From Perna viridis (taxonomy: Eukaryota): 64,000 nucleotides of DNA. Positions 1,088-58,640 of the stretch are shown here, one piece after another (within the stretch, counting starts at the first letter, position 1; the number at the start of each line of letters is the position of its first letter). A program made the translations under genes and the position numbers. The stretch is from assembly GCA_037379345.1 (NCBI GenBank), contig CM074520.1, positions 7,068,001 to 7,132,000 of the forward strand, written 5' to 3'. A model generated the notes under the pieces. The model was not told the origin of the DNA. It saw only the letters and a program-made list of their open reading frames with translations, and did not search any database.

Positions 1088-1423
1088 CTGAAAAGGAGAA
1101 TATTCAATTGCTGAAAAGTATTACTGTCATCATGGACACTACACGTTGGATAATGTTTAACAATATTTTTGTCTATAATAAAAGTTTAAGGTATGCTCAT
1201 TCACTGTATCATGTGAACTTAATCAATTTAAAAAAAATTCTTTATATTTGTAAATAATGTATTATCATGAAATATCATGGTTGTTGCCTTCTCCTGTCCC
1301 ATATCTTACAGCAAGTTTTGTTTAATAACATTTTGTACTTCAAAATGCCACACATTTTAATCTACTGACTTATTTAGATGTAAGGAAGAAATTATAATAT
1401 ATTGTATAAGAAAATAAGTTTAC

Positions 1424-1842
1424 CTGTGCAGAGCCATACACAGGTGGTTTGCCAGTCTCAGCTTTCACACCAAGTAAAATGTATGGATAGAGATGATAAT
1501 GTAGTCTGGACACCTTGGTAGTTATCTCCCCTGTCTGTTGGTTAATGGAGAAGAAGTTATTGATGTCACCAGTGGTTATTGTATACAAAATATCAGGATT
1601 ATTACTGACTGACGGAACTGTAGCCAACACTCGTCCAACTGATGTACCCTTGGCAACATTTTCCTCCACTGTGAACCTGTAGGTTGGTTGGTTAAACACA
1701 GGAGGATGAGAATTAGCTCCTGTAACACTGATATATACTGTGGCTGACTGAGAAGAACTGAGATCACCACCATCAGTAGCACCTATCTGTAGAATGTAGA
1801 CCTTCTCTTCTTGGGGTAGGACATTGATCAGAGTTATCTTTC
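1424..1842 (-). CDS. DCHS1: Dachsous coding exon 4 (end of EC7, EC8)
   Basis: Inside ORF 1370..1933: KITLINVLPQEEKVYILQIGATDGG...GKPPVYGSAQ. Acceptor gttctag, donor CAG|GTAAAC; 419 nt, phase 1 to 0. Confidence 0.93.
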
Positions 1843-4027
1843 CTAGAACAGCAACATTATAAAGCTTATCAAAAAGGAGATAAAATAAAAACAGTTTAAA
1901 ATTGAAATACTTCAATTTTGTTTTTCTGTTCAAGTTGTACTTGGTAAAACATATAGAAAATAAAACTTTAGAAATTCATTATTCATGAAAAGGTGAAAGA
2001 CAATAATATTGGTAGATTGAGAAATTTTAAATACAAGTAACAAATACAAATTTGTTCCTGAAACCGTCTTCAAACATTTGACTGACAATCATGTAATTTA
2101 TTGCTCAGAGTTATGTCCCTTGCATTGTACTGCCAGATGGAATGCCTTTATTATTTTATGATATAATTTTTCACTGCATTGACACATTCTGTAGAACAAT
2201 GTGACTTGAAGTGTTCAAAAGAGGACTTATGATAAAGATATATTTACGATAAACCATATTTAAACAAACACATGCAATGTAGCATTCTTGCTCTGCAATA
2301 AATTTTACTTTTCGAATGGCCCAGACGGAGATCAATAAAAAGAATTCACATTCATAATACACATTTTAGTTTATAGGTTTAATATTTTCCAGTTGAGCTC
2401 AAGTTGCATAATTTTGTCATTTTCTGCAGATTTTATGATGATCTTTCTAAGTCAATAAACTGATCTATTACAATAAGATGTTTAGAAAACACTTACCAAG
2501 AACAGTTTTTATGGATTTATAATGTGTTATATAATTCCTACATGATTTTTATATAGCTCTACCATAAGAGGTCATATTTGAGAGTCATGTTTTTTTTTTA
2601 CATCAATTTTTATTTCCAATGGAAGTGTATTTACTATTCACATAACCTACAGCCTTTAAAAAACTGAGATTAATTTAGATGAACAAGAAGCACTGTCTGC
2701 TAAATCTGATTTCTCAACTGGGGTAAAATGAAGTCCTTACATCAACAAATTAGGGCCAAGAATGGCAAAGAAAGAAATAAACAAGACCAATGAACTTCAT
2801 TTAAGTCTATTATAAACACAGAGTGTAGACCCATTTGGTTTCTTGTAATGACAAAATCATGAATCAAAATTTTTTTTTTTTTTTTTAAATAAACAAACAT
2901 GACAATAATTTTACATCCCCTTATAAACATGCCCCTCCCTGTATTTATGGTCAAAATCATTACTTCTGGAAATATGTTATTGAGGTAATTCGTTTGTATG
3001 AATACATAAATATGAAATAATTTGCCATTAAGGAAGAAACTTGAATCAGCTGTAAAATTACTGTAACAAATGAATATCAAAATTTATAAAAAAAAAAAAA
3101 AAAAAAAAAACCAACATAAAGAAGCCCTAGAAATTCTCATGTTTGAATAGCTACGTGTCAGCTAATTTTCATGTTTAGTTTAAACAGGATATTGCATATA
3201 CGTGTCACAAATGCAAGAATTGCATAAAGGATTGTAAATTTGTTATTTTTAAATAAAAAATGAAGTTTTAAATCAAACATGTAAATGAACAATTACAATG
3301 ATAAATGTAAAGTCATTAGAAATAGACTTAGGGAACATGAATGATCATTTATTATAATGTCTGAAATATGATCAAGTGCTTCTTATTTATCAAATATATT
3401 TAGAAACTTTTGTGCAACTTTTGTGGAAAAAAATGAACAATTATTAGTTAATGCAATTCACTAACATAAGGGAATTTTGTGAAAATGTGAGAAATGGTGG
3501 ACATCTTAATAACGTTACAATGTACTTAACTAGTGACATTGGCCTTCAACAATGACAATTTACCACAGACCAGTACAGGTTCAACAGCCTGAATTACTCT
3601 AATTTACTGCCATTTATTTTCATTACTCTTCATGCACACATGAAAAGCTTTGTCTTAACTCAAAAGTACAACAAGTCACACAAATTAAGCCTTAATTTCT
3701 ATGACATAGTTATAAATATGACAAATTGTAACTGCCTAGAGATGACTTATCATTTTTTTTTAAATATTTGGCCCCAAGACTTTTATATACATTAAAGGAT
3801 GCAGAAACAGTATTTGTACCAGAGAAAACTATATATCACTTCATCAGAGTGACCTGATCTTATTTGTTCTTGATCAATTCACAGTCAGGTAATTTTAAGT
3901 CTGCATTTATAGTCATCAGATACATGTATCTATACCTGATTACAGCAATAGATATAATAAAATACAGATTCTTGCATGAATACCTACACAAAGGAACCTT
4001 TGTGGTTGCATACAGAGAACTGATGAT

Positions 4028-4556
4028 ACAGAGACCAGGTACTTACCTAAATACCTGTCTATAGAGAACATTTCCCAGACTACAGAGACCAGGAACTTAC
4101 CTAAATACCTGTCTATAGAGAACATTTCCAAGACTACAGAGACCAGGTACTTACCTAAATACCTGTCTATAGAGAACATTTCCAAGACTACAGAGACCAG
4201 GTTCTTATCTAAATGCCTGTCTATAGAGAGCATTTCCCAGACTACAGAGACCAGGAACTTACCTAAATACCTGTCTATAGAGAACATTTCCAAGACTACA
4301 GAGACCAGTTACTTACCTAAATACCTGTCTATAGAGAACATTTCCCAGACTACAGAGACCAGGAACTTACCTAAATACCTGTCTATAGAGAACATTTCCC
4401 AGACTACAGAGACCAGGTACTTACCTAAATACCTGTCTATAGAGAACATTTCCAAGACTACAGAGACCAGGTTCTTATCTAAATGCCTGTCTATAGAGAA
4501 CATTTCCCAGACTACAGAGACCAGGTTCTTACCTGAATGCCTGTCTATAGAGAACA
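4028..4556 (-). repeat. 54-bp minisatellite, about 10 copies, spanning the Dachsous exon 3 donor
   Basis: Unit (minus) TGTTCTCTATAGACAGGYATTYAG|RTAAGWWCCTGGTCTCTGTAGTCTKGGAAA; period 54; an 18-aa repeat is visible in ORFs 3940..4293 and 4309..4590. Confidence 0.97.
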
Positions 4557-4763
4557 GGTTATCATCATTTCCACCCAGCATGCTGTACAAAATAGTACTG
4601 TAGTTGCCACTGTCAAGGTCGATTGCCTGTACAGTAATGACATTATCACCTGGTTGGATGTTAACATTGATATTAGTACTATAGTTCTGGGGGTAAAACT
4701 GAGGTCTGTTATCGTTGACATCTTCAATGTTAATACTGACGATGACTGAACTGTCTAGGCCAC
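4533..4763 (-). CDS. DCHS1: Dachsous coding exon 3 (end of EC6, first part of EC7)
   Basis: Acceptor ttttag at 4764; translates GLDSSVIVSINIEDVNDNRPQFYPQNYSTNINVNIQPGDNVITVQAIDLDSGNYSTILYSMLGGNDDNLFSIDRHSG; donor CAG|GTAAGA; 231 nt, phase 1 to 1. Alternative donors lie in the adjoining repeat. Confidence 0.9.
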
Positions 4764-5527
4764 CTAAAACACAAATTTGGATAAGTTCTTACATATCATT
4801 CATAAAAAAATATATTATTTTTTAACTTGAAGTTTTTCATCTAATTCTAGTTTTTCACATGCTTCTTTCAAGTGCTTTTTGCTGCTGTTTTTAAATTTTG
4901 ACCATTATTTTAACTGCACAAATTGTAATGTACAATATAGATATAAAGGTAGGTATTCCACCATCATTGGCAAATTGTACCATTTATGAAAATTTTAGCA
5001 ATGTTACTTCCTTATCTTTCATTACAACCAAGTCAATACATGTACTATGCTTCACGATATAACAATGTCTTATAAATTCCAAATTTGACTTTATAATATC
5101 AAATACAAGTAATTAATAATCAAGCCTTTGGTTCTTTTTGTCTCTACAATAACAGCTTGAGTCTTGGGTCACAGTTGTTATAACAAGGAAGAAAATAATG
5201 ACAATATTCTAATCAATTAAAACATTCCAAAAAATAGTTTTCATGTCAGAAGTATTAAATTTTATTGATAAAACACAAATATAGCAGTGGTTTCAGTGTA
5301 AGATATACTAATAGACTACAAGGCCTTTGTAAGAAGCATGCAGATATATAGATGCAGGTCACATTTTTTTATTCTTTGTATTGTATTTATTAAATATTTA
5401 GAGTGGGTGATATAGAGACTGATTTATCTTTACACTTTATGTATAAAACACTGTGTTGTTTTAGGAAAAGGAATCATCTAAGAATTATTAGTACATGTGT
5501 ATGTACCATCATTCTGAATATATCACA

Positions 5528-5820
5528 GATTGATTGACTGAGGTTTTAAGTCTTAGCACAGATATTTCATGCATTTCTGGAATACAACATTTTGACCAAT
5601 CAAACAGACCCTGCATTGTACTAGTCTGACATGCTGAGTCAAGTTTTAATGTGCTAGCTCGATCACAGAAGCAACAGTCCACAGGTAGACGGGTCACCCA
5701 ACTCAGACACATTATTGTGACTGTTCCATATGCCACAGGCTTGGTAGAGAAGTTCAAAGTCATTGGTGAGATTCCCCAGGGGTTCAAACCCATGACCTCC
5801 CACAATGGCTACCAAGAGGC
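5528..5820 (-). mobile_element. Degenerate tRNA-derived SINE (Meta-type core, tentative)
   Basis: Minus strand: B-box-like GGGTTTGAACCCC near the 5' end, central ...GTCTACCTGTGGACTGTTG...GAGCTAGCAC resembling bivalve SINE cores, and a TCAATCAATC tail. Confidence 0.7.
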
Positions 5821-5843
5821 CATAAAATAACATAGAATATTAC

Positions 5844-6027
5844 CACTATCAGTTGCATAGACTGGGAATTCATAGATTTTCTGTGTTTCATAATCCAGAG
5901 GTTTAGCTGCATACAGACAGCCGGTTGTACTGACAATACCAAACACGTTCAAGCTCGACTGGGTCATGTTGGCAAGGTGATATGTCACTTGAGCATTACC
6001 ATTGCAATCAGGGTCAAAGGCTGATAC
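5844..6027 (-). CDS. DCHS1: Dachsous coding exon 2 (EC6)
   Basis: Acceptor tttttttacag at 6028; translates VSAFDPDCNGNAQVTYHLANMTQSSLNVFGIVSTTGCLYAAKPLDYETQKIYEFPVYATDSG; donor G|GTAATA; 184 nt, phase 0 to 1. Confidence 0.92.
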
Positions 6028-9000
6028 CTGTAAAAAAACAACAGATATTTGGACGATTTGTAATTTGTAAGTGTTGAACTATTATACATGAAAAGGTAGT
6101 AATAAAATATGAATTGTATACAAAAATCACAATTTTCTGATGTAATTTTGTATTCTGTTTCTATATTAGTAACTGCTTGAGTGGTATTCCTTACAGTATT
6201 ACAAACCATTACATTTGATAACCATTTCAAATCTGGGACCTCTTCAGTTAAATTGATATGACATTTGCTATCATGTTCCCATTGCAAAAGAAAGAAAAAA
6301 CTTCACATGCCATGTGGTACCTGATATTCTATTTCGACCAAATGACCTCCAATAATGCAGAAATATGCAGTTTTATGGCCAGCATTATGATAATTTTACA
6401 CAACAATGCAAAAACAATTTTCTGTTGTCTACAGTTATACCCTGCAGTAAGATATACTAGAGAAATGATCAAAGGGAAATAACTCTTACAAAGATAAAAC
6501 CATCACACAAGGAGCCAGGTGTCTAGAGAAGGAATCTCAGATTGTATGATTTATATGAACCATAAAACCTTATCATTATATCTGTACAAAGGGCATGAAA
6601 GGGCAATGGTAGTGAGGAATTTTCACTTCCACTATAATGTCTGCTATAGTTAGATTCCTTCGGTAATTATTTTAGTAGCTATAATTCAATTAGAATGCTT
6701 TATGGGTTTCTACAAGTGCCACCTTTGTTCAAGACATGCTATAAGCATGGAGTTCAACCCCAAAATGATGACAGAGTAATCAAAAAAGGAATTTCTAGAT
6801 TCATGAAACAACTCCTGCTGAAATACCCTTCTACGATTTATGTTAGGTTCAGCAAGTCAAATAAGTTCTTCAAGAGTTCCTACAAATGACAGACAATTAG
6901 ATGAGGAATTTCTACACAGACCATCATTTCTATGCACAAAGTTAATATACCTGGAGCAAAGGAGGTTCCATGTTATTTAGAGGACCATTAGACATTCCTA
7001 AATATATGAATTTTCAGTATTATTACATGTTCTCGATAAGTTTGACCCCAGAAAGGGGTTAGGAGGTTAGTTCAGTTTTTGACAGAGATCTAAATAACTG
7101 TCAAAAATGTTCTATCATTATACTGCCATTTTTGTCAGAATTGTTTATGTATCACGTTGTACCACCCAAATTTGAATAATCATCTCAACTCTTACAAAAG
7201 TAAAAATTTTTATCGAATATAATTTGCACTAAATACATCATATCGATGGGATTATCTGATTCTGTACATACAACATGTCATCCATCTTGGTTTCTTATTC
7301 AAAGATTCAAATATTGTCCTTCATTTAACATATATCACCATTATCATGTCACTCTCGACTAAACTAACTGATCTAATTAAACAGTTAATTACCTAAGATA
7401 TATTGAACACCATACAATAACCCCCTTTTAAAGTTATAACGAGATTTAAGATTAATATTAAAAACCCCATGTGAGATTATGACAACCTCATTTCAAATAT
7501 ATCTGAAATCTTTTTGGAGACATGTTTAATACAGTTCTAAATATACCTTGAAGTAATTCGATGCATTTCAACTAAGTAATTTAAAATTTTCTTTTCAAAG
7601 ATAGGAATTTAGTCTTATGACACCATAAGGAGATGGACCTTCAAAGGATAAGCTATAAAAATCATTTTAAAATTTTACATAAATTTGCAGGTTTTTAAAG
7701 ACACTATGTAAATACTCTTTTGAGCATTTTATAATCTTGTTACCATGTATTGTAATAATACTGAATGGTAAAAGTGAACCATGTCAAAAAACCAAATCAT
7801 ATTCAATAGGGTCCTATCTTTATCATGTAAGGACTGATCAAATAAGAGTGGAAATATAACAAAGGAACAGCAATGATTTGTTCCTAGTTATCTTATTTTA
7901 TGTCTTGAATCACTTCAAGCAGCCCATTAAAGTTAACAGAACTTAGATATTGTAAAGTCATTGAAAAGTACGAAACACTGAGGGCTGAGTGCACAGACAG
8001 GCTGACTGATAGACTGTGTCTTTATTGCCCACAAAAGAGCATTATTACAATGATAACACACAATAAATTATAGCATTGTCTGAGAGATAGAAACATTCAT
8101 TATACACCAAGGACCAAAATCAAAAACCATCAAATTCTTATCTGAAAAAGCAAAATGCCATATTCCTGAGAATCACATGCACTAGGATAGCATTCCTCTG
8201 AATATTTCTATAATTACAGAAAATAAACATTCTGGCAGAAACCTTTTTACAGTTTATATAAATAAATCTTTAAGTTTCCTTTTGGCTGGTTCTTGTCTAT
8301 CAAAGCAATATCAATTTAGCAAAAAAAAAAAAAAACAGACTGCAATCGCTGGTCAAAAGATTTTCTCACTTTTCATTTTTGTGAAGATTCAGGAAGACAT
8401 CTGCCAAGAAAACAAATCAATTCCACTTCACCTTATTTAACTTCGATGAGCCTTTTCCCGTTACACAACTTCCAAGAATTTTTCACCAGTCTGTGTTTTT
8501 GTTGGCTGTTTGATGATTTTAAAAGCTTAACTGCCTCTTAAAACTAATTTTTAAAATGTTTTTATTTCATGTGTTTTTCCTTAAATTATTGACTAAACTA
8601 ACATATCTTTTTAAAACGAAGTGCAGCATTTAACTATTATAATTTAAGACAAATGTTAAAATCTTCATGGCTTACAGTTTTACTTCAGTACTCCTCGTTG
8701 ATCAAAGTTGATTGGATAACAAGCTTTGTTTATGTGTCTAAAGCTTACTTCTATAATGTTCTGCAGCATTTTAAATGTACAAGAATTACCTGGTAGCATT
8801 ATGCTTGATCATACATAATGCAAGTTGCAGATAGAATTTCAGAATTCAAAAGATGGCTCTCCAAAATATCAGAATATAGAAGAAAAAAACTTACATCAAA
8901 GAACTTTTTTTTTTTCAAGTTCAGTGTAAAACAAAATGTTTCGATTCTGTTTAAATATTTATGTTTTAGCAAATAAGTTACAGATATTACAGCTTGTGCT

Positions 9001-41600: not shown

Positions 41601-41642
41601 GCACTCTAACCTTGTATACAAAAAAAGACAAGCAGCACTTAC

Positions 41643-43403
41643 CTGTAAAAAACACTTCCCCTGTTCAGCGTTCTCTTTCACTGACGTTTTGTAGAATGAC
41701 TGGTGGAATTCTGGCTCCATGTCATTCACATCCCGAATCGTCACCAGAACAACAGTGGTAGAAGAAAGAGATGGAATTCCAGAATCTGATGCTACCACAG
41801 TAATCCGAGGTTGTGCATTCACTTCACAATCTGTTTTATCCACACGCGTAGAGATAAATCCAGTGTTACTGTCGATTTTAAACCAGTCCGAGTTGGTGTC
41901 CTGAACATCCAAAATTCTATATGTTATTTTCGCATTCTGACCTTCATCCTTGTCTGTTGCTGTGACTTTAGTTACTGGGGTACCAACTGCTGACTGTTCT
42001 GAAATTTCCGCTTGGTACTCCTTTTTTGAAAAAGACGGAGCATTGTCATTGATATCATCAACAAATAATGTGAAAGATGAAGTAGCATGCAGTGGACGAT
42101 CACCTGAATCCACAGCCACAATATTCAGGTCATACTTGGCAACATTTTCCCTATCCAGTAAACTTTTTACATATATGAAATAGATTACTTTGTCTTCAGT
42201 CCTTAGACCGAAATGACCAAGATCTCCTTGTAGTGATACATTTATATTGGAAAAATATTCTGTGGGATTGTCTGGATCACTCACTGATATTCTAACAACA
42301 TAGGTTCCTATCGTGGCATTCTCCGCGACTGCAGCAGACTGATTTGAGGTGGTTAAAAACATAAGGTTGATAGTTGCTGGTTTCTCATTTATATTTTCAA
42401 CAAAAACTTCTATTCTTGCAGATGAAAATAATGGTTGAGAACCATTATCTGTAGCAATAACTGAAAGTTCATATTTTTGTGTTGTTTCATAATCTAAAGG
42501 TTTATTTACGCGTACAATACCGCTTGATGGATCTACAGAGAATCTTTCTTCAGAATTGTACAGATGGTCCAGAGTATACGTAATTTTGGCATTTTCTCCA
42601 GAATCTTGGTCAGTAGCTTCAACTCTTGCTATACTTGTACCAACTGGTACACTTTCATTTACGCGGATGGAGTATTTGGTGTGTATGAATTGAGGAGGGT
42701 TATCATTCGCATCTATGATGGTAACATTAACACGTACATCACCAGACCTCTGTGGGTCTCCTCCATCTACAACACGTATTAGTAAATTATATGTAGATTT
42801 TTCTTCATAGTCTAAGGCACTTTTTGTTTCAAGTTCTAAATTAAATAAGCTACTACCAGATCTTTTAGTTCTTAATTCAAAGTGTCCATCTTCATTTCCA
42901 ACAATAATTTGAGCGTCTTGAATTCCATTTTGTCCAATATCCTGGTCTACAACACTCCCAACTATAACTTTAGTTCCAACTGGTGTTGTTTCTGAAAGAC
43001 TTAGCGATTTGCTCCCATTTGGAAAATATGGAGAATGATCATTGTCGTCTGTAACATTTATATAAACTTTAATGATATTTCCTGTAGTTGTTGCGAAGAA
43101 TACTAATTGGTAATTTGCTGTAGTTTCTCTATCTAACTTCTTGCTAGTCCGTATATCACCGTTTTCTAAGTCTATATTGAAGTCTGGAGAATCTTCAAAC
43201 GCTTGAAATGGAGGGGCTATATTGGAGTTGCCCTCCCCGATCGTACCAACATACACGCTAGCTGACTGCTCCTCCCGAACACTCAAAAACTGCTCCAAAT
43301 CACCTTTACAATGGCTTGCAAGTATACTCACAATTATTAACAATATAAAATTCCATTTTTTAAGTCTAGTGTGATGGGGAACACAACTGGCAAAGTGTTC
43401 CAT
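41643..43403 (-). CDS. DCHS1: Dachsous protocadherin, first coding exon (signal peptide, cadherin repeats EC1-EC5, start of EC6)
   Basis: 606-aa ORF with hydrophobic signal (FILLIIVSILASHCKG) and repeated cadherin motifs (LDRE/LDYE, AxDxG, DxNDNxP). Exon ends at CFLQ with donor CAG|GTAAGT (GT 41642-41641); 1761 nt, phase 0. The spliced CFLQ|VSAFDPDC resembles Dachsous family sequence as I recall it. Confidence 0.93.
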
Positions 43404-44831
43404 TTTGATTTAAAAAATATATTTTTCCAACTCCAAATATTTACATTCCTCTGAAAAATACAGTATCTTCTATTTTCTAAGTCATTTTTCTTCGCTTGAA
43501 AATATTTCGATTCGTATAAAAATAATTTTAACAGTTTGTCCAATTTCTCACAGCATGTTTCGGCTATTTGTTGTTAAATGGTAAAACAAATCCGTCACAC
43601 GAAACCCCATTATACAATTACAACGGTATAGCATTTGTCACTTCTTATTTACCTGTAAAAATGTTAACACCTGAGAATTAACGGCAACCTCTGATTATAA
43701 TCGTTCCTTATCGTATCACACTTGTACTAAATAATTCAAATCTTCATCCAAATCCATTTTTATCACCAACGGTCCAAATTCATGTCCATTTTGTATTATT
43801 TCAGTGGAATACACACAATGCTACCTGAACTCTCAGTTACTATGTATAGGACTCCAATCAAGCCTCGGTTTCGATTCGTTTGAGATTTACCGCTTCGGTA
43901 GAGAATGGCCTTAAGATAATCTATTTGTTGAGCAAAAGACTCTACAACGCTTTGTGAGATTATATCAGAGTATTTTTAATTAAAGAATTAAAGAATTAAC
44001 AGTCTAATAATGTACATTTACTACTTAGACATTAGAATTGAATGTTTTCATATAAAGACGTACGGTTTCTTCAAAGAATATAACTTGCAGAGATCAAATC
44101 GGATAAAAAAGTTATTATCAGTGACAAAATTAAATGGGACATTCAGAGGGGACCAAGAGGATCGCTTAACTTTAATTTTTAACGGGGAGAATACTATATT
44201 TTGCTGAAAAAAACATTTGACCAGGGAGTGCAATATAAAGTCCCGATGTCAGAGACCTATAATCAATTACAGTTATATGCTGGTGTGACGTATATATAAA
44301 TATATAAATTCAAATTCATTTCTTTACTTAACCAACTCATAGGACCATAAGCTTATAATCACAAAGGAGAAAAAAATTTAAAAAAATATATATATATGCA
44401 TTAATAGCACGGTGACAAATGACGGATCAATTCCTGAATGCCATAAGTGCAAGCTTATGGTAATTGCTCAGTTTCGCTGGTCAACAGCAGTTTTTAAGAA
44501 CGTCCAAAGCAATTTAAATTTTTGTATGATATTCAGTCTGCTAAATATTGAAAACATATCTTTCTAAACGTGCTTGACGCCGAGGTAAAAACTCTTGATC
44601 CTGTATAGGTGTGTATTCATGCACAACAAAATATTTCATTTTGAAGCTCTGAGGCAAAATGAAGAGATATGTGAAAAGTGGGGTACCCGGCATAGGCACT
44701 GGTTTCGTATTTTAAAAAAAAATACCCCTTCCCTTCCATTCCTTTTACACAAGGTAAATATATACCATTTCTAGGGAAGGAAAGGGGTAAAATTTTGGAC
44801 AAGTTCCTGTGGGACATGGTCTCACTTTGAA

Positions 44832-55444: not shown

Positions 55445-55720
55445 TTTTTATATCCCGGTATTATGTGATGCCTTCAGAAAAATTGTATGTCAGTCTGTCT
55501 GTTTGTCTGTCTGTCCATGGATGGTTTGCAGATGATAACTTGTGAACAGATCATTGGTTTTTTTTTATAACTTAGCAAAGGTGTTTACTATTATAAAATA
55601 CAGGTTAGATCAATTTTCAGCAAAATCCAAAATGTGTATTTTTTTGAGTCAAGCCGTTTTGAACATTTTGCAATCCCTTTTTCCACCATTACGTAGAAGG
55701 GTATCACCTTATGTTCCATT
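55445..55720. mobile_element. Helentron-associated (HINE/DINE-like) remnant
   Basis: TTTTTATATCCC start followed by a (GTCT)n microsatellite and GATGATAACT, a layout typical of non-autonomous Helentrons; degenerate. Confidence 0.45.
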
Positions 55721-55782
55721 ACTGCCTTATATTTTTTCATCATATTTTTTTTTATATGTCTGTGATTTCTCTTTTTTTGCAG

Positions 55783-56007
55783 AGAGACAAAAGTCCAGAT
55801 CCTACAGACAGTGCTCCTCCAAGTCTAGAAATATGTGTGAATCCATCCATGTTCACTGTATACTCTACGGTGAGGCAGTCCATATTAGAACAGTGTATGA
55901 AGGAAGCTACACAAATTTATCATCAAAGTCAATCATTACCCTCAGACTCTGACTCTGATGATGATAGAGAAGATAAAAATAAAGAAGGGCCAATTAAATT
56001 GCCCAAG
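55783..56007 (+). CDS. MYCBP2: MYCBP2 exon 3
   Basis: RDKSPD...NPSMFTVYSTVRQSILE...SDSDSDDD...EGPIKLPK, closely resembling the human MYCBP2 N-terminus as recalled (NPSAFNIYCNVRHCVLE...PPIKLPK); 225 nt, AG/GT flanked. Confidence 0.92.
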
Positions 56008-56514
56008 GTAAATTTAGATAGGGTTTCATCCATTTCTATGTACATAATATGAATTACATTGTTCTTACAAAGTTTGGCTCAATAGTTCAACCAGAATGTG
56101 TAGAGGTTCGCCTTGATTGTAATTTAGTAGCATTTTCAATCTTTGTAAATATTTTACTATCATTTTGTATTCTATTGAAAATAATGCATTTTTGAATGTA
56201 ACAATAATTAAATGAAATGTCAGAAGAATTTTCAGAAGTTATTTGATAGGAGCTGTCATGTACAATGTATGACAGGAAAGATAGGTAAACATGAGTTGTC
56301 TGTTTCACAAAAAATTAACAGTGTATAATTAATCAGGAGATAAGACATTACAATACCATTTTCCTTTATGAGGTCATAATGTACAATCAGTTTTACACTT
56401 TTGATACTACAGATCTACATCAGCATGTGAAGTTTAAGTCTGATTTTATTTTTACTGTCAAATTTTGTATAACAAGTAAAGAAACTTGTCCGTCACTTGT
56501 TTTTCTTCTTTCAG

Positions 56515-56668
56515 ATTGTTGGACTTGGGCTGACAGGAGTGTTTGAGTTGGTTAGAGATACAAAAGAAAAGTACCCAGAACTATGTGTTAAAGCTTTGAC
56601 AGCTTTACTAGATATGTTACAAGGACAGCAACCAGAGAGCATGAAATCTGAACCTCCAGAGGTCATAG
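56515..56668 (+). CDS. MYCBP2: MYCBP2 exon 4
   Basis: IVGLGLTGVFELVRDTKEKYPELCVKALTALLDMLQGQQPESMKSEPPEVI; contains the LQGQQPE..SEPPEV motif; donor G|GTAAGT; 154 nt. Confidence 0.94.
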
Positions 56669-57031
56669 GTAAGTGATCAAATGATCAATATATAGAAGTA
56701 TTACCTTATCAATGTTTCTGATTTTTGTCTTCACTATCATACCAAAACTTAAAGTTGATCTATATTCTGTTAATTTGGTTTAAACTAAGACTTCATATTC
56801 TATTAATAGTATTTTTTTATATACCTAAATTCATAACTATGTCTGGCATACAGTTTACAAAAAAACTTCCATAAAGAATCATCTGATTATTTTTACATAA
56901 CAATGCAGTTAACATTTTATCTATATCACTTGTGCAGAGATGCTAAGATTGTATTTGTTTCTGATGAATTACTGGTAAGAATTTTTGCTTACTATGCTTT
57001 TTAACTTTTTATTAAACTCTTTATTTTACAG

Positions 57032-57213
57032 AAAACTTCTTCAACTTGCTTAAGGACATTGCCCTGTGGCCTGACCCAGATAAAGAGTTGTCTGCCCTTG
57101 CTTGCTCTGCTTTACTCAGTCTGGTCATAGCCTTAGGTGATACAGGGAAGTTGTTAACAGCCGTTAGAGCCATGCTGATGGGAGCAGGTGCTTTGTCATC
57201 ACAGGATATAATG
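57032..57213 (+). CDS. MYCBP2: MYCBP2 exon 5
   Basis: ENFFNLLKDIALWPDPDKELSALACSALLSLVIALGDTGKLLTAVRAMLMGAGALSSQDIM; 182 nt, phase 1 to 0. Confidence 0.92.
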
Positions 57214-57635
57214 GTTAGGATTATCTATTCAATCCACTGAAATTCTGTATTACTGATAAGTAATGCATTAACTTCTTAATTAATGTGTATCATGCTCAGT
57301 ACTACGCATCTTGATACACATAGAACTATTTGTTTAAATTCCTACTGTAGTAGTTTGTAGGGAATGTTTGTTATTTCTTGCTTATTCTGTCAGTTTCAGA
57401 ACACATTTTCTCTTGACACCTTTGTTATTTCATGAAGTTAGAAATGACATTGTGATAATGTGCTTAAAAAAATACATTTTTTTTAAAGAAACTGCAGCCA
57501 GCAGTGTTTAAAAATATTTGATAAAATGAAATCTTACAGCAGTCTAATTTTGAGTGACTAATATGTATGTTCTTTTCAGAAATCTCCATAATACCTAAGG
57601 TTTTTAAGTTTGAGGATCATGATTTTATCTTGCAG

Positions 57636-57780
57636 GTTCCAGGAATTTTAACAGGTCTTCAGAAAAGTGTACAGGCAGTATTACTTGGAAAGTCTATCCT
57701 TCCTGATTGGTTAACACAAGGGGTCAAACAGGGGTCAGAGATTGACAAATTTAAAATAGAAGATCTTCCAGATGTGTCAG
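57636..57780 (+). CDS. MYCBP2: MYCBP2 exon 6
   Basis: VPGILTGLQKSVQAVLLGKSILPDWLTQGVK...; 145 nt, donor CAG|GTATTT. Confidence 0.92.
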
Positions 57781-58249
57781 GTATTTACCATGTTTTATCC
57801 CTTCATCTGTGCTCTGATCACATTTTTTCCAGATTTTCAGGTCATTATTCACTTGAACACACTGCAGGGATCAATTTTAAATCCTATTCTGATGGGTCAT
57901 TGACCCTCCAGTTTCATCAACAATGGACAAAAAAATACAGGAAAAAGGCTTTCTAACTGCACTGGATGCAACACATATTAATGATCAGGGATGTTCCAGT
58001 AAAACATACATGGGACCCGGAGATGGCATTTTTAAAAAAAATATATACTTGGTTGTAGGTTGGTGGAAAATGCATCTATGGCACGGTACTGGGCTTAGAA
58101 ATTCGCTTCTGTGAATGGTTGTTGGGAAAATGAAGTAACATTCTGTTGAAAGTTGTTTTTCACTTTCTCGAAATGGTCCAAAATAAATCTCTGTCATTGT
58201 ATAAACCTTTAGTATAGTTGAGTTACGCGCTTTTGTTGCCAGAATTTTG

Positions 58250-58640
58250 TGCCATTTTTACAGGTGTTCCGCCCGGAAATCACCTAGTGTTTGTTTTGAC
58301 ATTATTCTTCTGGTATTTTTGGGGTTTTGCTGTGGAGCAATGGTGCGACCCGAGACACCCAAACATCAGAAAAGATGTCAACTTCCATCGTTTGTTGATG
58401 TGGTTCATAAGTGTTCCTCATCTCTTGATTTGTATGTAGTTTAGACCGTTGGTTTTCCCGTTTGGATAGTTTTACACCAGTAATTTTTGAGGCCCTTTAT
58501 AGCTTACTTTTCGGTGTGATCCAAGGCTCTGTGTTAAAGATCGTACTTAGACTTATTATTATGGTTTATACTTTAAATAAATTGTGACTTGGATGGAGAG
58601 TTGTGTCATTGGCACTCATACCACATCTTCTTATATCTAT
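58250..58640 (+). mobile_element. Interspersed repeat of a family I recall as abundant in mytilid bivalves
   Basis: Ends ...GGCCCTTTATAGCT...TTGTGACTTGGATGGAGAGTTGTGTCATTGGCACTCATACCACATCTTCTTAT; locally CpG-richer than the host intron. Confidence 0.6.

What the first reader, a model, noticed from the sequence alone, without database searches (positions are those of the whole stretch)
4028..4556. Minisatellite built from a Dachsous exon-intron junction: a ladder of in-frame 5' splice sites
Seen: the 54-bp unit is the last 24 nt of exon 3 plus 30 nt of intron, repeated 10 times. Exon-end positions fall at 4533 (native, CAG|GTAAGA), 4479, 4425, 4371, 4317, 4263, 4209, 4155, 4101 and 4047. Seven copies carry TAG|GTAAGT, whose intronic hexamer fits the U1 consensus better than the native donor; two (4479, 4209) are killed (GT>AT). 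Because 54 is a multiple of 3 and the unit is stop-free, donors 4425, 4371 and 4317 would insert 36, 54 or 72 aa into cadherin repeat EC7. These inserts are (KxLVSVVxEMFSIDRYLG)-type repeats and still end in an FSID...G|KITL strand. Inference: a VNTR that could tune the length or dose of a planar-cell-polarity adhesion protein by donor choice, and a natural snapshot of splice-site multiplication by tandem duplication. It may equally be neutral if only one donor is used.
Basis: partly seen in the sequence, partly recalled or inferred. Interest (0 to 1): 0.8.

Follow-up and report, generated by a model that had tools for sequence, protein, structure and literature searches.

The report
Splice-junction minisatellite with silent decoy donors
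A 54-base piece spanning the end of one exon and the start of the next intron of an invertebrate dachsous (cell-adhesion) gene has been copied ten times in a row. This leaves seven good-looking spare splice sites in the intron, but all the RNA on hand uses only the original site, as in known human cases such as the F7 gene.

Summary
Window 4027-4556 is a 54-bp x 9.8 tandem array (94% match). Its first unit is the last 24 nt of dachsous exon 3 plus the first 30 nt of intron 3, on the minus strand.

- **Donors.** Seven copies keep a strong donor (UAG|GUAAGU), two are dead (GU>AU), and donors 4425, 4371 and 4317 would add 36, 54 or 72 in-frame residues.
- **Not an artefact.** The array is unique in the 723-Mb genome. 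An independent DNA run shows k-mer depths that fit the reference copy structure.
- **Functional reading not supported.** Spliced RNA contigs from two studies (depth 23 and 7) and both junction reads of a raw RNA-seq run join 4533 to 1842 only. No RNA lies on the array. Depth is modest, so isoforms below roughly 10-20% are not excluded.
- **Young and lineage-specific.** One relative has a 28-bp x 2 duplication across the same junction and another has none. The array grew partly by a 5-unit (270-bp) block duplication, which also copied the single GT>AT mutation.
- **Known kind.** Minisatellites whose first monomer spans an exon-intron boundary are described for human F7, CBS, IFI6, LMNB2 and PDGF (PMC1557585). 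In F7 only the most upstream donor is used.

The scan holds two further unchecked notes of junction-born minisatellites elsewhere in this genome. Verdict: a real new member of a known kind, probably neutral.

The parts
4027..4556 (-). 54-bp x 9.8 minisatellite. Unit 0 spans the exon 3/intron 3 boundary. Units 1-9 lie in intron 3, and unit 9 is cut short after 41 nt.
   Evidence: TRF. Unit table. Unique in the genome. Independent DNA run X3 carries collapsed array contigs at 4.07x and 1.31x flank depth, against reference 31-mer multiplicities of 3.84 and 1.25.
4533..4763 (-). Dachsous exon 3 (231 nt, phase 1 at both ends). It encodes the end of one cadherin repeat and the first half of the next, ending in ...NLFSIDRHS+G.
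   Evidence: RNA joints 5844|4763 and 4533|1842. Pfam Cadherin hit. Boundaries read.
4527..4535 (-). Native donor CAG|GTAAGA, the only donor seen in RNA.
   Evidence: Joint 1841/4532 (cut +1) in X13 (depth 23.4), X19 (7.04) and 2 reads of X21. U1 duplex -11.0 kcal/mol.
4473..4481 (-). Copy 1, dead pseudo-donor TAG|ATAAGA.
   Evidence: duplex -2.7 kcal/mol.
4419..4427 (-). Copy 2, intact pseudo-donor TAG|GTAAGT. If used it would add 108 nt (36 aa) in frame.
   Evidence: No RNA support.
4365..4373 (-). Copy 3, intact pseudo-donor. It would add 162 nt (54 aa) in frame.
   Evidence: No RNA support.
4311..4319 (-). Copy 4, intact pseudo-donor. It would add 216 nt (72 aa) in frame. Its intron part carries the in-frame TAA (4309-4311) that closes the frame for all later copies.
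4041..4265 (-). Copies 5-9. Intact pseudo-donors have exon-like ends at 4263, 4155, 4101 and 4047, and a dead one at 4209. All lie behind the stop, so use of any would give a premature stop.
1843..4532 (-). Intron 3 (2690 nt, GT..AG).
   Evidence: Joint 'skips 2690', ends CT..AC on the + strand.
1424..1842 (-). Exon 4. It starts GA AAG ATA ACT, i.e. (G)KITL, and carries the rest of the same cadherin repeat.
   Evidence: RNA contig pieces. Pfam Cadherin. Boundaries.
5844..6027 (-). Exon 2.
   Evidence: RNA contig pieces and joint. Acceptor and donor read.
41643..43409 (-). Exon 1 coding part: signal peptide, FAT4-like N-terminal cadherin domain and further cadherin repeats. The donor is CAG|GTAAGT at 41643|41642.
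   Evidence: Pfam. Best named relatives are dachsous-like / protocadherin-16/23. Donor read.

Best explanation
This is a young, lineage-specific intronic minisatellite. It arose by tandem duplication (slippage or unequal exchange) of a 54-bp segment straddling the exon 3/intron 3 junction of a dachsous orthologue.

It later grew by unit and multi-unit duplications. The latest was a 5-unit, 270-bp block. Each unit carries a copy of the donor, so seven strong pseudo-donors and two dead ones now follow the authentic donor.

The splicing machinery uses the most upstream (authentic) donor, and the pseudo-donors stay silent. This is the behaviour shown experimentally for the human F7 IVS7 minisatellite (5'-to-3' scanning, exon definition).

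The array is therefore most likely neutral or nearly so for Dachsous protein. It remains a reservoir of cryptic donors that would matter only if the authentic donor were weakened.

Shown here: the array, its origin from the junction, its uniqueness, its presence in a second DNA sample, and native-donor-only splicing at the available depth. Inferred: the scanning or exon-definition mechanism, and neutrality.
For: Array anatomy. Gene identity. Single place in the genome.

RNA: X13 (11,256-nt spliced contig, depth 23.4) and X19 (3,472-nt contig, depth 7.04) both join 4533 to 1842, as do 2 of 2 junction reads in raw run X21. RNA depth is zero across 4040-4531, while DNA contigs of X3 were laid there, so the region was not masked.

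Pseudo-donors match the native one in U1 pairing and in predicted accessibility: 0.23-0.56 against 0.44. Position, not strength or structure, therefore distinguishes the site that is used.

Lineage-specific: a relative with 77% exon-3 identity has only a 28-bp x 2 duplication at the same junction (L008:997-1051). Another with 78% identity has none. Introns do not align between the species.

Block growth: 97.3% identity at offset 270.

Precedent: PMC1557585 describes junction-spanning minisatellites in F7, LMNB2 and PDGF with only the authentic donor used. It shows by mutagenesis that the most upstream site wins even against pseudo-sites with higher U1 complementarity.
Against: RNA depth is low. 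There are only 2 raw junction reads, and Logan contigs drop rare variants, so use of pseudo-donors below roughly 10-20% is not excluded. Use limited to a tissue or stage not sampled is also not excluded.

In human IFI6 and CBS the two nearest pseudo-sites are used (PMC1557585), so silence is not a rule of the class.

The nearest pseudo-donor here is dead (GT>AT), which could hint at past selection against its use. That would mean the duplicates were not always neutral.

The scanning mechanism has been tested only in mammalian cells.
Confidence: 0.8

Rival explanations
1. One reading: donor choice among the in-frame pseudo-donors (4425, 4371, 4317) makes Dachsous isoforms with 36-72 extra residues in one cadherin repeat. 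Use of later donors lowers dose through premature stops. Copy number would then tune the protein.
For: The three donors are intact, in frame and as complementary to U1 as the native one. Human IFI6 and CBS do use their two nearest pseudo-sites.
Against: No joint other than 4533>1842 and no RNA depth on the array, in three RNA data sets from three studies. The nearest pseudo-donor is dead. The array is absent from relatives. The insert would split a conserved cadherin fold after its FxIDxxxG motif, and the array-coded peptide hits no credible domain.
Confidence: 0.08
2. The array acts as an intronic U1-binding platform. It would strengthen use of the upstream authentic donor, or protect the pre-mRNA, without the pseudo-donors being spliced.
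For: Seven near-consensus U1 sites lie within 490 nt downstream of the donor in use.
Against: Relatives splice the same exon without such an array. The native donor is already strong at -11.0 kcal/mol. No test is possible with these tools.
Confidence: 0.05
3. The array is an assembly artefact, or its length is mis-assembled.
For: Tandem arrays are error-prone in assemblies. Raw long reads were not examined.
Against: Independent DNA run X3 differs from the window by SNPs and a 47-bp indel. It holds array contigs whose depths relative to flanks (4.07x, 1.31x) match the reference 31-mer multiplicities (3.84, 1.25).
Confidence: 0.02
4. The array reflects a junction-specific amplification process in this genome, not a random duplication that happened to include a junction.
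For: Two other unchecked notes report junction-born minisatellites elsewhere in this genome, one with five in a single gene. A relative duplicated the same junction. The share of GGTAAGT occurrences lying in arrays of 3 or more copies with period 27-57 is 1.71%, against 0.50%, 0.99% and 1.07% for three control heptamers of the same composition.
Against: The roughly 2-fold excess rests on match counts dominated by a few long arrays. Among 25 GGTAAGT arrays listed, only 10 have A at -2, near the 34% background, so most are not evidently from true donors. The genome is rich in minisatellites, so by my rough estimate tens to hundreds should straddle donors by chance.
Confidence: 0.05

Closest known systems
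Human F7 intron 7 (IVS7) 37-bp VNTR minisatellite (Borensztajn et al. 2006, PMC1557585)
   Same: The first monomer spans the exon-intron boundary. The authentic donor is followed by reiterated pseudo-donors. Only the most upstream donor is used. Some pseudo-sites would keep the reading frame yet are not used.
   Different: F7: 4 nt of exon plus 33 nt of intron, 5-9 copies, pseudo-sites identical to a weak donor (UGG|gugggu), and copy-number polymorphism and pseudo-site competence both shown experimentally. Here: 24 + 30 nt, 10 copies, near-consensus donors that differ slightly from the native one, two dead copies, an invertebrate gene. Polymorphism and competence are untested.
Human CBS 31-bp VNTR at the exon 13/intron 13 boundary, and the IFI6 (6-16) intron 2 minisatellite
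   Same: Minisatellite built on an exon-intron junction, with donors reiterated in the intron.
   Different: In CBS and IFI6 the two nearest pseudo-sites are used alongside the authentic one, and CBS repeat number is associated with enzyme activity. Here no pseudo-site use is seen, and the nearest one is dead.
Human LMNB2 (100-bp x 10-15) and PDGF intron 4 (81-bp x 16-18) junction minisatellites
   Same: Longer monomers with only the authentic donor used, as here.
   Different: Different genes and taxa. No in-frame ladder is discussed for them in the paper read.

Membership tests
Minisatellite whose first monomer spans an exon-intron boundary (F7 / CBS / IFI6 / LMNB2 / PDGF type) | Head-to-tail array whose first unit contains the last exon bases and the first intron bases | tested here: met
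   TRF. Unit table. Exon end fixed by RNA joints at 4533.
Minisatellite whose first monomer spans an exon-intron boundary (F7 / CBS / IFI6 / LMNB2 / PDGF type) | The donor sequence is reiterated downstream in the intron (5' pseudo-sites) | tested here: met
   Seven of nine copies keep G|GUAAGU with U1 duplex -10.5 to -12.1 kcal/mol. Two are AU.
Minisatellite whose first monomer spans an exon-intron boundary (F7 / CBS / IFI6 / LMNB2 / PDGF type) | F7/LMNB2/PDGF sub-pattern: only the most upstream (authentic) donor is used | tested here: met
   Only the 4533>1842 joint appears in X13, X19 and X21, with no RNA on the array. Sensitivity is limited to isoforms above roughly 10-20%.
Minisatellite whose first monomer spans an exon-intron boundary (F7 / CBS / IFI6 / LMNB2 / PDGF type) | Copy number varies between individuals (VNTR) | tested here: inconclusive
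   One independent DNA run has k-mer depths that fit the reference copy structure. Short-word contigs cannot count units, and no second allele was seen.
Minisatellite whose first monomer spans an exon-intron boundary (F7 / CBS / IFI6 / LMNB2 / PDGF type) | Pseudo-sites are competent and become active when the authentic donor is inactivated | not testable with these tools
   Needs a minigene or a natural donor mutant.
Dachsous (protocadherin-16/23) orthologue | Signal peptide, FAT4-like N-terminal cadherin domain and a long run of cadherin repeats, with dachsous proteins as best relatives | tested here: met
   Pfam PF25374 plus 5 PF00028 stretches in exon 1 and cadherin hits in exons 2-5. The best named hits are dachsous-like (Tubulanus, Octopus, Photinus) and a JGI 'protocadherin-16/23' at 80% identity.
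Dachsous (protocadherin-16/23) orthologue | Full architecture: about 27 cadherin repeats, a transmembrane segment and a conserved cytoplasmic domain | not tested
   The gene runs off the window's start.

The most novel reading that the evidence does not exclude
Either of two readings remains possible. (a) The in-frame pseudo-donors at 4425, 4371 and 4317 are used at a low level, or in a tissue or stage not sampled. That would give Dachsous isoforms with a 36-72-residue repeat inserted in one cadherin domain, with the amount set by array length. (b) The array is one instance of a genome-wide bias that amplifies splice junctions into minisatellites in this animal. This is hinted at by two other unchecked notes in this genome, by a second duplication of the same junction in a relative, and by a roughly 2-fold excess of GGTAAGT in arrays.
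Probability: 0.12. Interest if true: 0.55.

Novelty: new member of a known kind. Interest (0 to 1): 0.3.

Why it matters
It gives a natural test, outside mammals, of the rule that the most upstream of several equivalent 5' splice sites wins. Here the competitors are near-consensus and partly in frame. It also shows how tandem duplication can stock an intron with ready-made cryptic donors next to a planar-polarity gene. For the gene itself the array appears to have no effect, so the practical value is as a splicing model and a possible polymorphic marker, not as a new mechanism.

Tried and rejected
1. **Dispersed satellite or mobile element.** Rejected: a whole-genome search finds only this place.
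2. **Gene on the + strand.** The 207-aa ORF at 3980-4600 is a by-product of the mostly stop-free unit. It has no RNA and no domain.
3. **RNA structure hiding the pseudo-donors.** Unpaired probabilities are 0.23-0.56 for pseudo-sites against 0.44 for the native site, so there is no separation.
4. **Pseudo-donors stronger than the native donor.** U1 duplex energies are within about 1 kcal/mol.
5. **Word searches for spliced fragments with alternative junctions.**
   - The read-through ORF found only exon-3 ORFs of two relatives.
   - Exon 4 found only genomic ORFs.
   - These blanks are weak. The length window (0.55-1.75x) excludes the long ORFs of well-assembled transcripts.
6. **Aligning the orthologous intron.** Introns of the two relatives do not align with this one; only exons do, at 73-75%.
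7. **Deeper origin of the unit tail.** The last 10 nt of the unit loosely resemble exon sequence about 30 nt upstream of the unit start. This could mean a longer original duplication followed by deletions. It is too short to test and is left as speculation.
8. **Genome-wide enrichment of donor heptamers in arrays.** About 2-fold and not decisive.
9. Exons were searched one by one by reference.

Full report
**1. What is there**

On the minus strand, window 4533-4763 is an exon encoding the end of one cadherin repeat and the first half of the next. It ends ...NLFSIDRHS plus the first base of a Gly codon.

Tandem Repeats Finder reports a single array at 4027-4556: period 54, 9.8 copies, 94% matches, no indels, score 934.

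Nine further units follow.
- Seven read TAG|GTAAGT. Their exon-like ends are at 4425, 4371, 4317, 4263, 4155, 4101 and 4047.
- Two read TAG|ATAAGA (4479, 4209).
- Only 8 of the 54 columns vary.

The reading frame runs open from the exon to a TAA at 4309-4311 in the intron part of copy 4. Donors 4425, 4371 and 4317 would therefore add 108, 162 or 216 nt in frame. Later donors would give a premature stop.

**2. The gene**

- The exon ORFs carry Pfam Cadherin domains. The first coding exon (41643-43409) has a signal-peptide-like start, a FAT4-like N-terminal cadherin domain and five Cadherin stretches.
- Its best named relatives are 'protein dachsous-like' of a nemertean, octopus and beetles (42-45% identity) and a JGI protein called protocadherin-16/23 (80%). 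It is a dachsous orthologue of an invertebrate.
- The species is coded in the tools and was not resolved.
I did not enumerate the repeats rigorously.

**3. Is the array real DNA?**

- The genome is 723 Mb in 46 contigs, and the array matches only itself.
- DNA run X3 comes from another sample and study. It differs from the window by five substitutions and a 47-bp indel. It yields a 68-nt contig on 4027-4093 at depth 248 and a 46-nt contig on 4389-4434 at depth 80, against about 61 in unique flanks.
- The reference 31-mer multiplicities of those two stretches are 3.84 and 1.25. The observed ratios are 4.07 and 1.31.
- An array of like structure therefore exists in an independent sample, so an assembly artefact is very unlikely. 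Exact copy number in X3 cannot be read from such contigs.

**4. Which donor is used?**

This was the single read-laying run, on window 1201-6200.
- Run X13 has an 11,256-nt contig (depth 23.4) and run X19 a 3,472-nt contig (depth 7.04). Both come from runs only guessed to be RNA, but both lack the introns. Both join exon 2 to exon 3 (5844|4763) and exon 3 to exon 4 (4533|1842, skip of 2690, GT..AG).
- Raw RNA-seq run X21 (19% of it read) gives 2 reads on the same 4533|1842 joint and none on any other.
- No RNA record lies on 4040-4531. The small depth in bin 4374-4540 is exactly the exon's last 8-9 bases.
- X3's DNA contigs were laid inside the array, so the blank is not due to masking.
- The three RNA sets come from three studies.

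Limits: two raw junction reads are few, and Logan contigs drop rare variants. An isoform below roughly 10-20% in these samples, or one confined to an unsampled tissue, is not excluded (my estimate).

Two word searches for short spliced fragments with other junctions found none. The search's length window makes that a weak negative.

**5. Why the native donor?**

- Strength does not separate the sites. Duplex energy with the U1 5' end is -11.0 kcal/mol for the native site, -10.5 to -12.1 for the seven pseudo-sites and -2.7 for the dead ones. The U1 sequence was taken from general knowledge.
- Predicted accessibility does not separate them either: 0.44 against 0.23-0.56.
- What differs is position, since the native site is the most upstream.
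- That is the rule shown by mutagenesis for the human F7 intron 7 minisatellite. [quoted passage not shown]
- I infer the same scanning or exon-definition logic here. It was not tested.

**6. History**

- Identity between array positions is 93-96% at most offsets but 97.3% at offset 270. Copies 1, 2 and 3 match copies 6, 7 and 8 with 1, 1 and 0 differences. The last growth step was therefore a five-unit block duplication.
- The two dead donors sit in copies 1 and 6, which are also the most native-like units. They represent one GT>AT mutation that was then copied.
- The consensus unit has an internal echo at offset 33/21: 22 of 54 matches, against 7-18 at all other offsets. A further TTCTCTGTA-like motif follows the array. 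This suggests older, decayed duplications of the same motif.
- Relatives:
  - Contigs L008 and L009 (exon 3 is 77% identical in protein) carry a 28-bp x 2 tandem duplication across the same exon-intron junction (TRF, L008:997-1051, 89% matches).
  - Contigs L002-L007 (78%) have a plain junction and no array in a 1.3-kb intron 3.
  - Introns do not align between the species.
- The 54-bp array is thus lineage-specific and young, which fits neutrality. The junction seems prone to duplication. The shared core holds a short palindrome (TCTATAGA here, TCTAGA in the relative's second copy). Any role for it in slippage is speculation.

**7. Genome context**

- Two other first-stage notes, unchecked, describe junction-born minisatellites elsewhere in this genome. 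One is behind a KIF13 donor and one reports five in a single gene.
- I asked whether donor-like heptamers are over-represented in arrays. GGTAAGT repeated three times at spacings that fit periods of 27-57 gives 1,253 matches out of 73,317 genomic occurrences (1.71%).
- Three control heptamers of the same composition give lower shares:

| Heptamer | Matches in arrays | Genomic occurrences | Share |
|---|---|---|---|
| GGTAAGT | 1,253 | 73,317 | 1.71% |
| TGAATGG | 571 | 115,168 | 0.50% |
| GATGGTA | 897 | 91,029 | 0.99% |
| ATGGTAG | 910 | 84,785 | 1.07% |

- This is about a 2-fold excess, but the counts are dominated by long arrays.
- Among the first 25 distinct GGTAAGT arrays listed, only 10 have A at -2. 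That is close to the 34% A background.
- The genome is simply rich in minisatellites. By my rough estimate tens to hundreds should straddle donors by chance. A junction-specific process is not shown and not excluded.

**8. Comparison with the known**

PMC1557585 lists the class explicitly: minisatellites whose first monomer spans an exon-intron boundary.
- F7: 37 bp, 5-9 copies, only the authentic donor used.
- LMNB2 and PDGF: only the authentic donor used.
- IFI6 and CBS: the two nearest pseudo-sites are also used.

The CBS 31-bp VNTR at exon 13/intron 13 is also cited in PMC5188458 and PMC1395315, with repeat number linked to lower enzyme activity.

The present array meets the structural criteria and follows the F7, LMNB2 and PDGF pattern. 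Differences are the host (an invertebrate planar-polarity cadherin), near-consensus pseudo-donors, a multiple-of-three unit that leaves three in-frame options, and a dead nearest copy.

**9. Verdict**

The origin by junction duplication is supported. The functional 'length or dose tuning' reading is not supported by the RNA on hand. This is a new member of a known kind and most likely neutral, with interest about 0.3.

Noticed in passing
L008:997-1051 (also L009): A related species carries a 28-bp x 2 tandem duplication (89% matches) across the orthologous exon 3/intron 3 junction. Its second donor-like site is altered (AGC|GTAAGA). The same junction has therefore been duplicated in a second lineage.
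   Followed up: partly
window 4789-4835: DNA run X3 lacks 47 bp of A/T-rich intron 2, ending 25 nt upstream of the exon 3 acceptor. This is a structural polymorphism close to the branch-site region.
   Followed up: no
window 4714: X3 has G>A on the + strand in exon 3, a synonymous change (AAC>AAT, Asn).
   Followed up: yes
window 5560-5720 (intron 2): A high-copy dispersed repeat. X3 depth is about 3,200 against 61 in the flanks, with many loose ends, and it is also present in RNA contigs of X13 and X19 that continue into unrelated sequence.
   Followed up: no
window 41640-41652 and 6025-6037: The end of exon 1 plus the start of intron 1, and the end of intron 1 plus the start of exon 2, share the same 13 bases (TTTTTTACAG|GTA). 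This direct repeat at both ends of a 35.6-kb intron may be coincidence of splice consensus or a trace of how the intron arose.
   Followed up: no
window 55600-58450 (+ strand): Several open frames of a second gene on the + strand (for example 56473-56673, 57016-57237, 57558-57953). The two pieces scanned had no Pfam hit.
   Followed up: partly
G000 genome-wide (examples C1:6845114-6846127, C1:28565420-28565802): The genome is rich in minisatellites. About 0.5-1.7% of all occurrences of any tested heptamer lie in arrays of 3 or more copies with period 27-57, and roughly 300 arrays carry GGTAAGT in each unit.
   Followed up: partly
window 3980-4600 (+ strand): A 207-aa open frame runs antisense through the array. 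It is a side effect of the repeat, with no RNA on it.
   Followed up: yes
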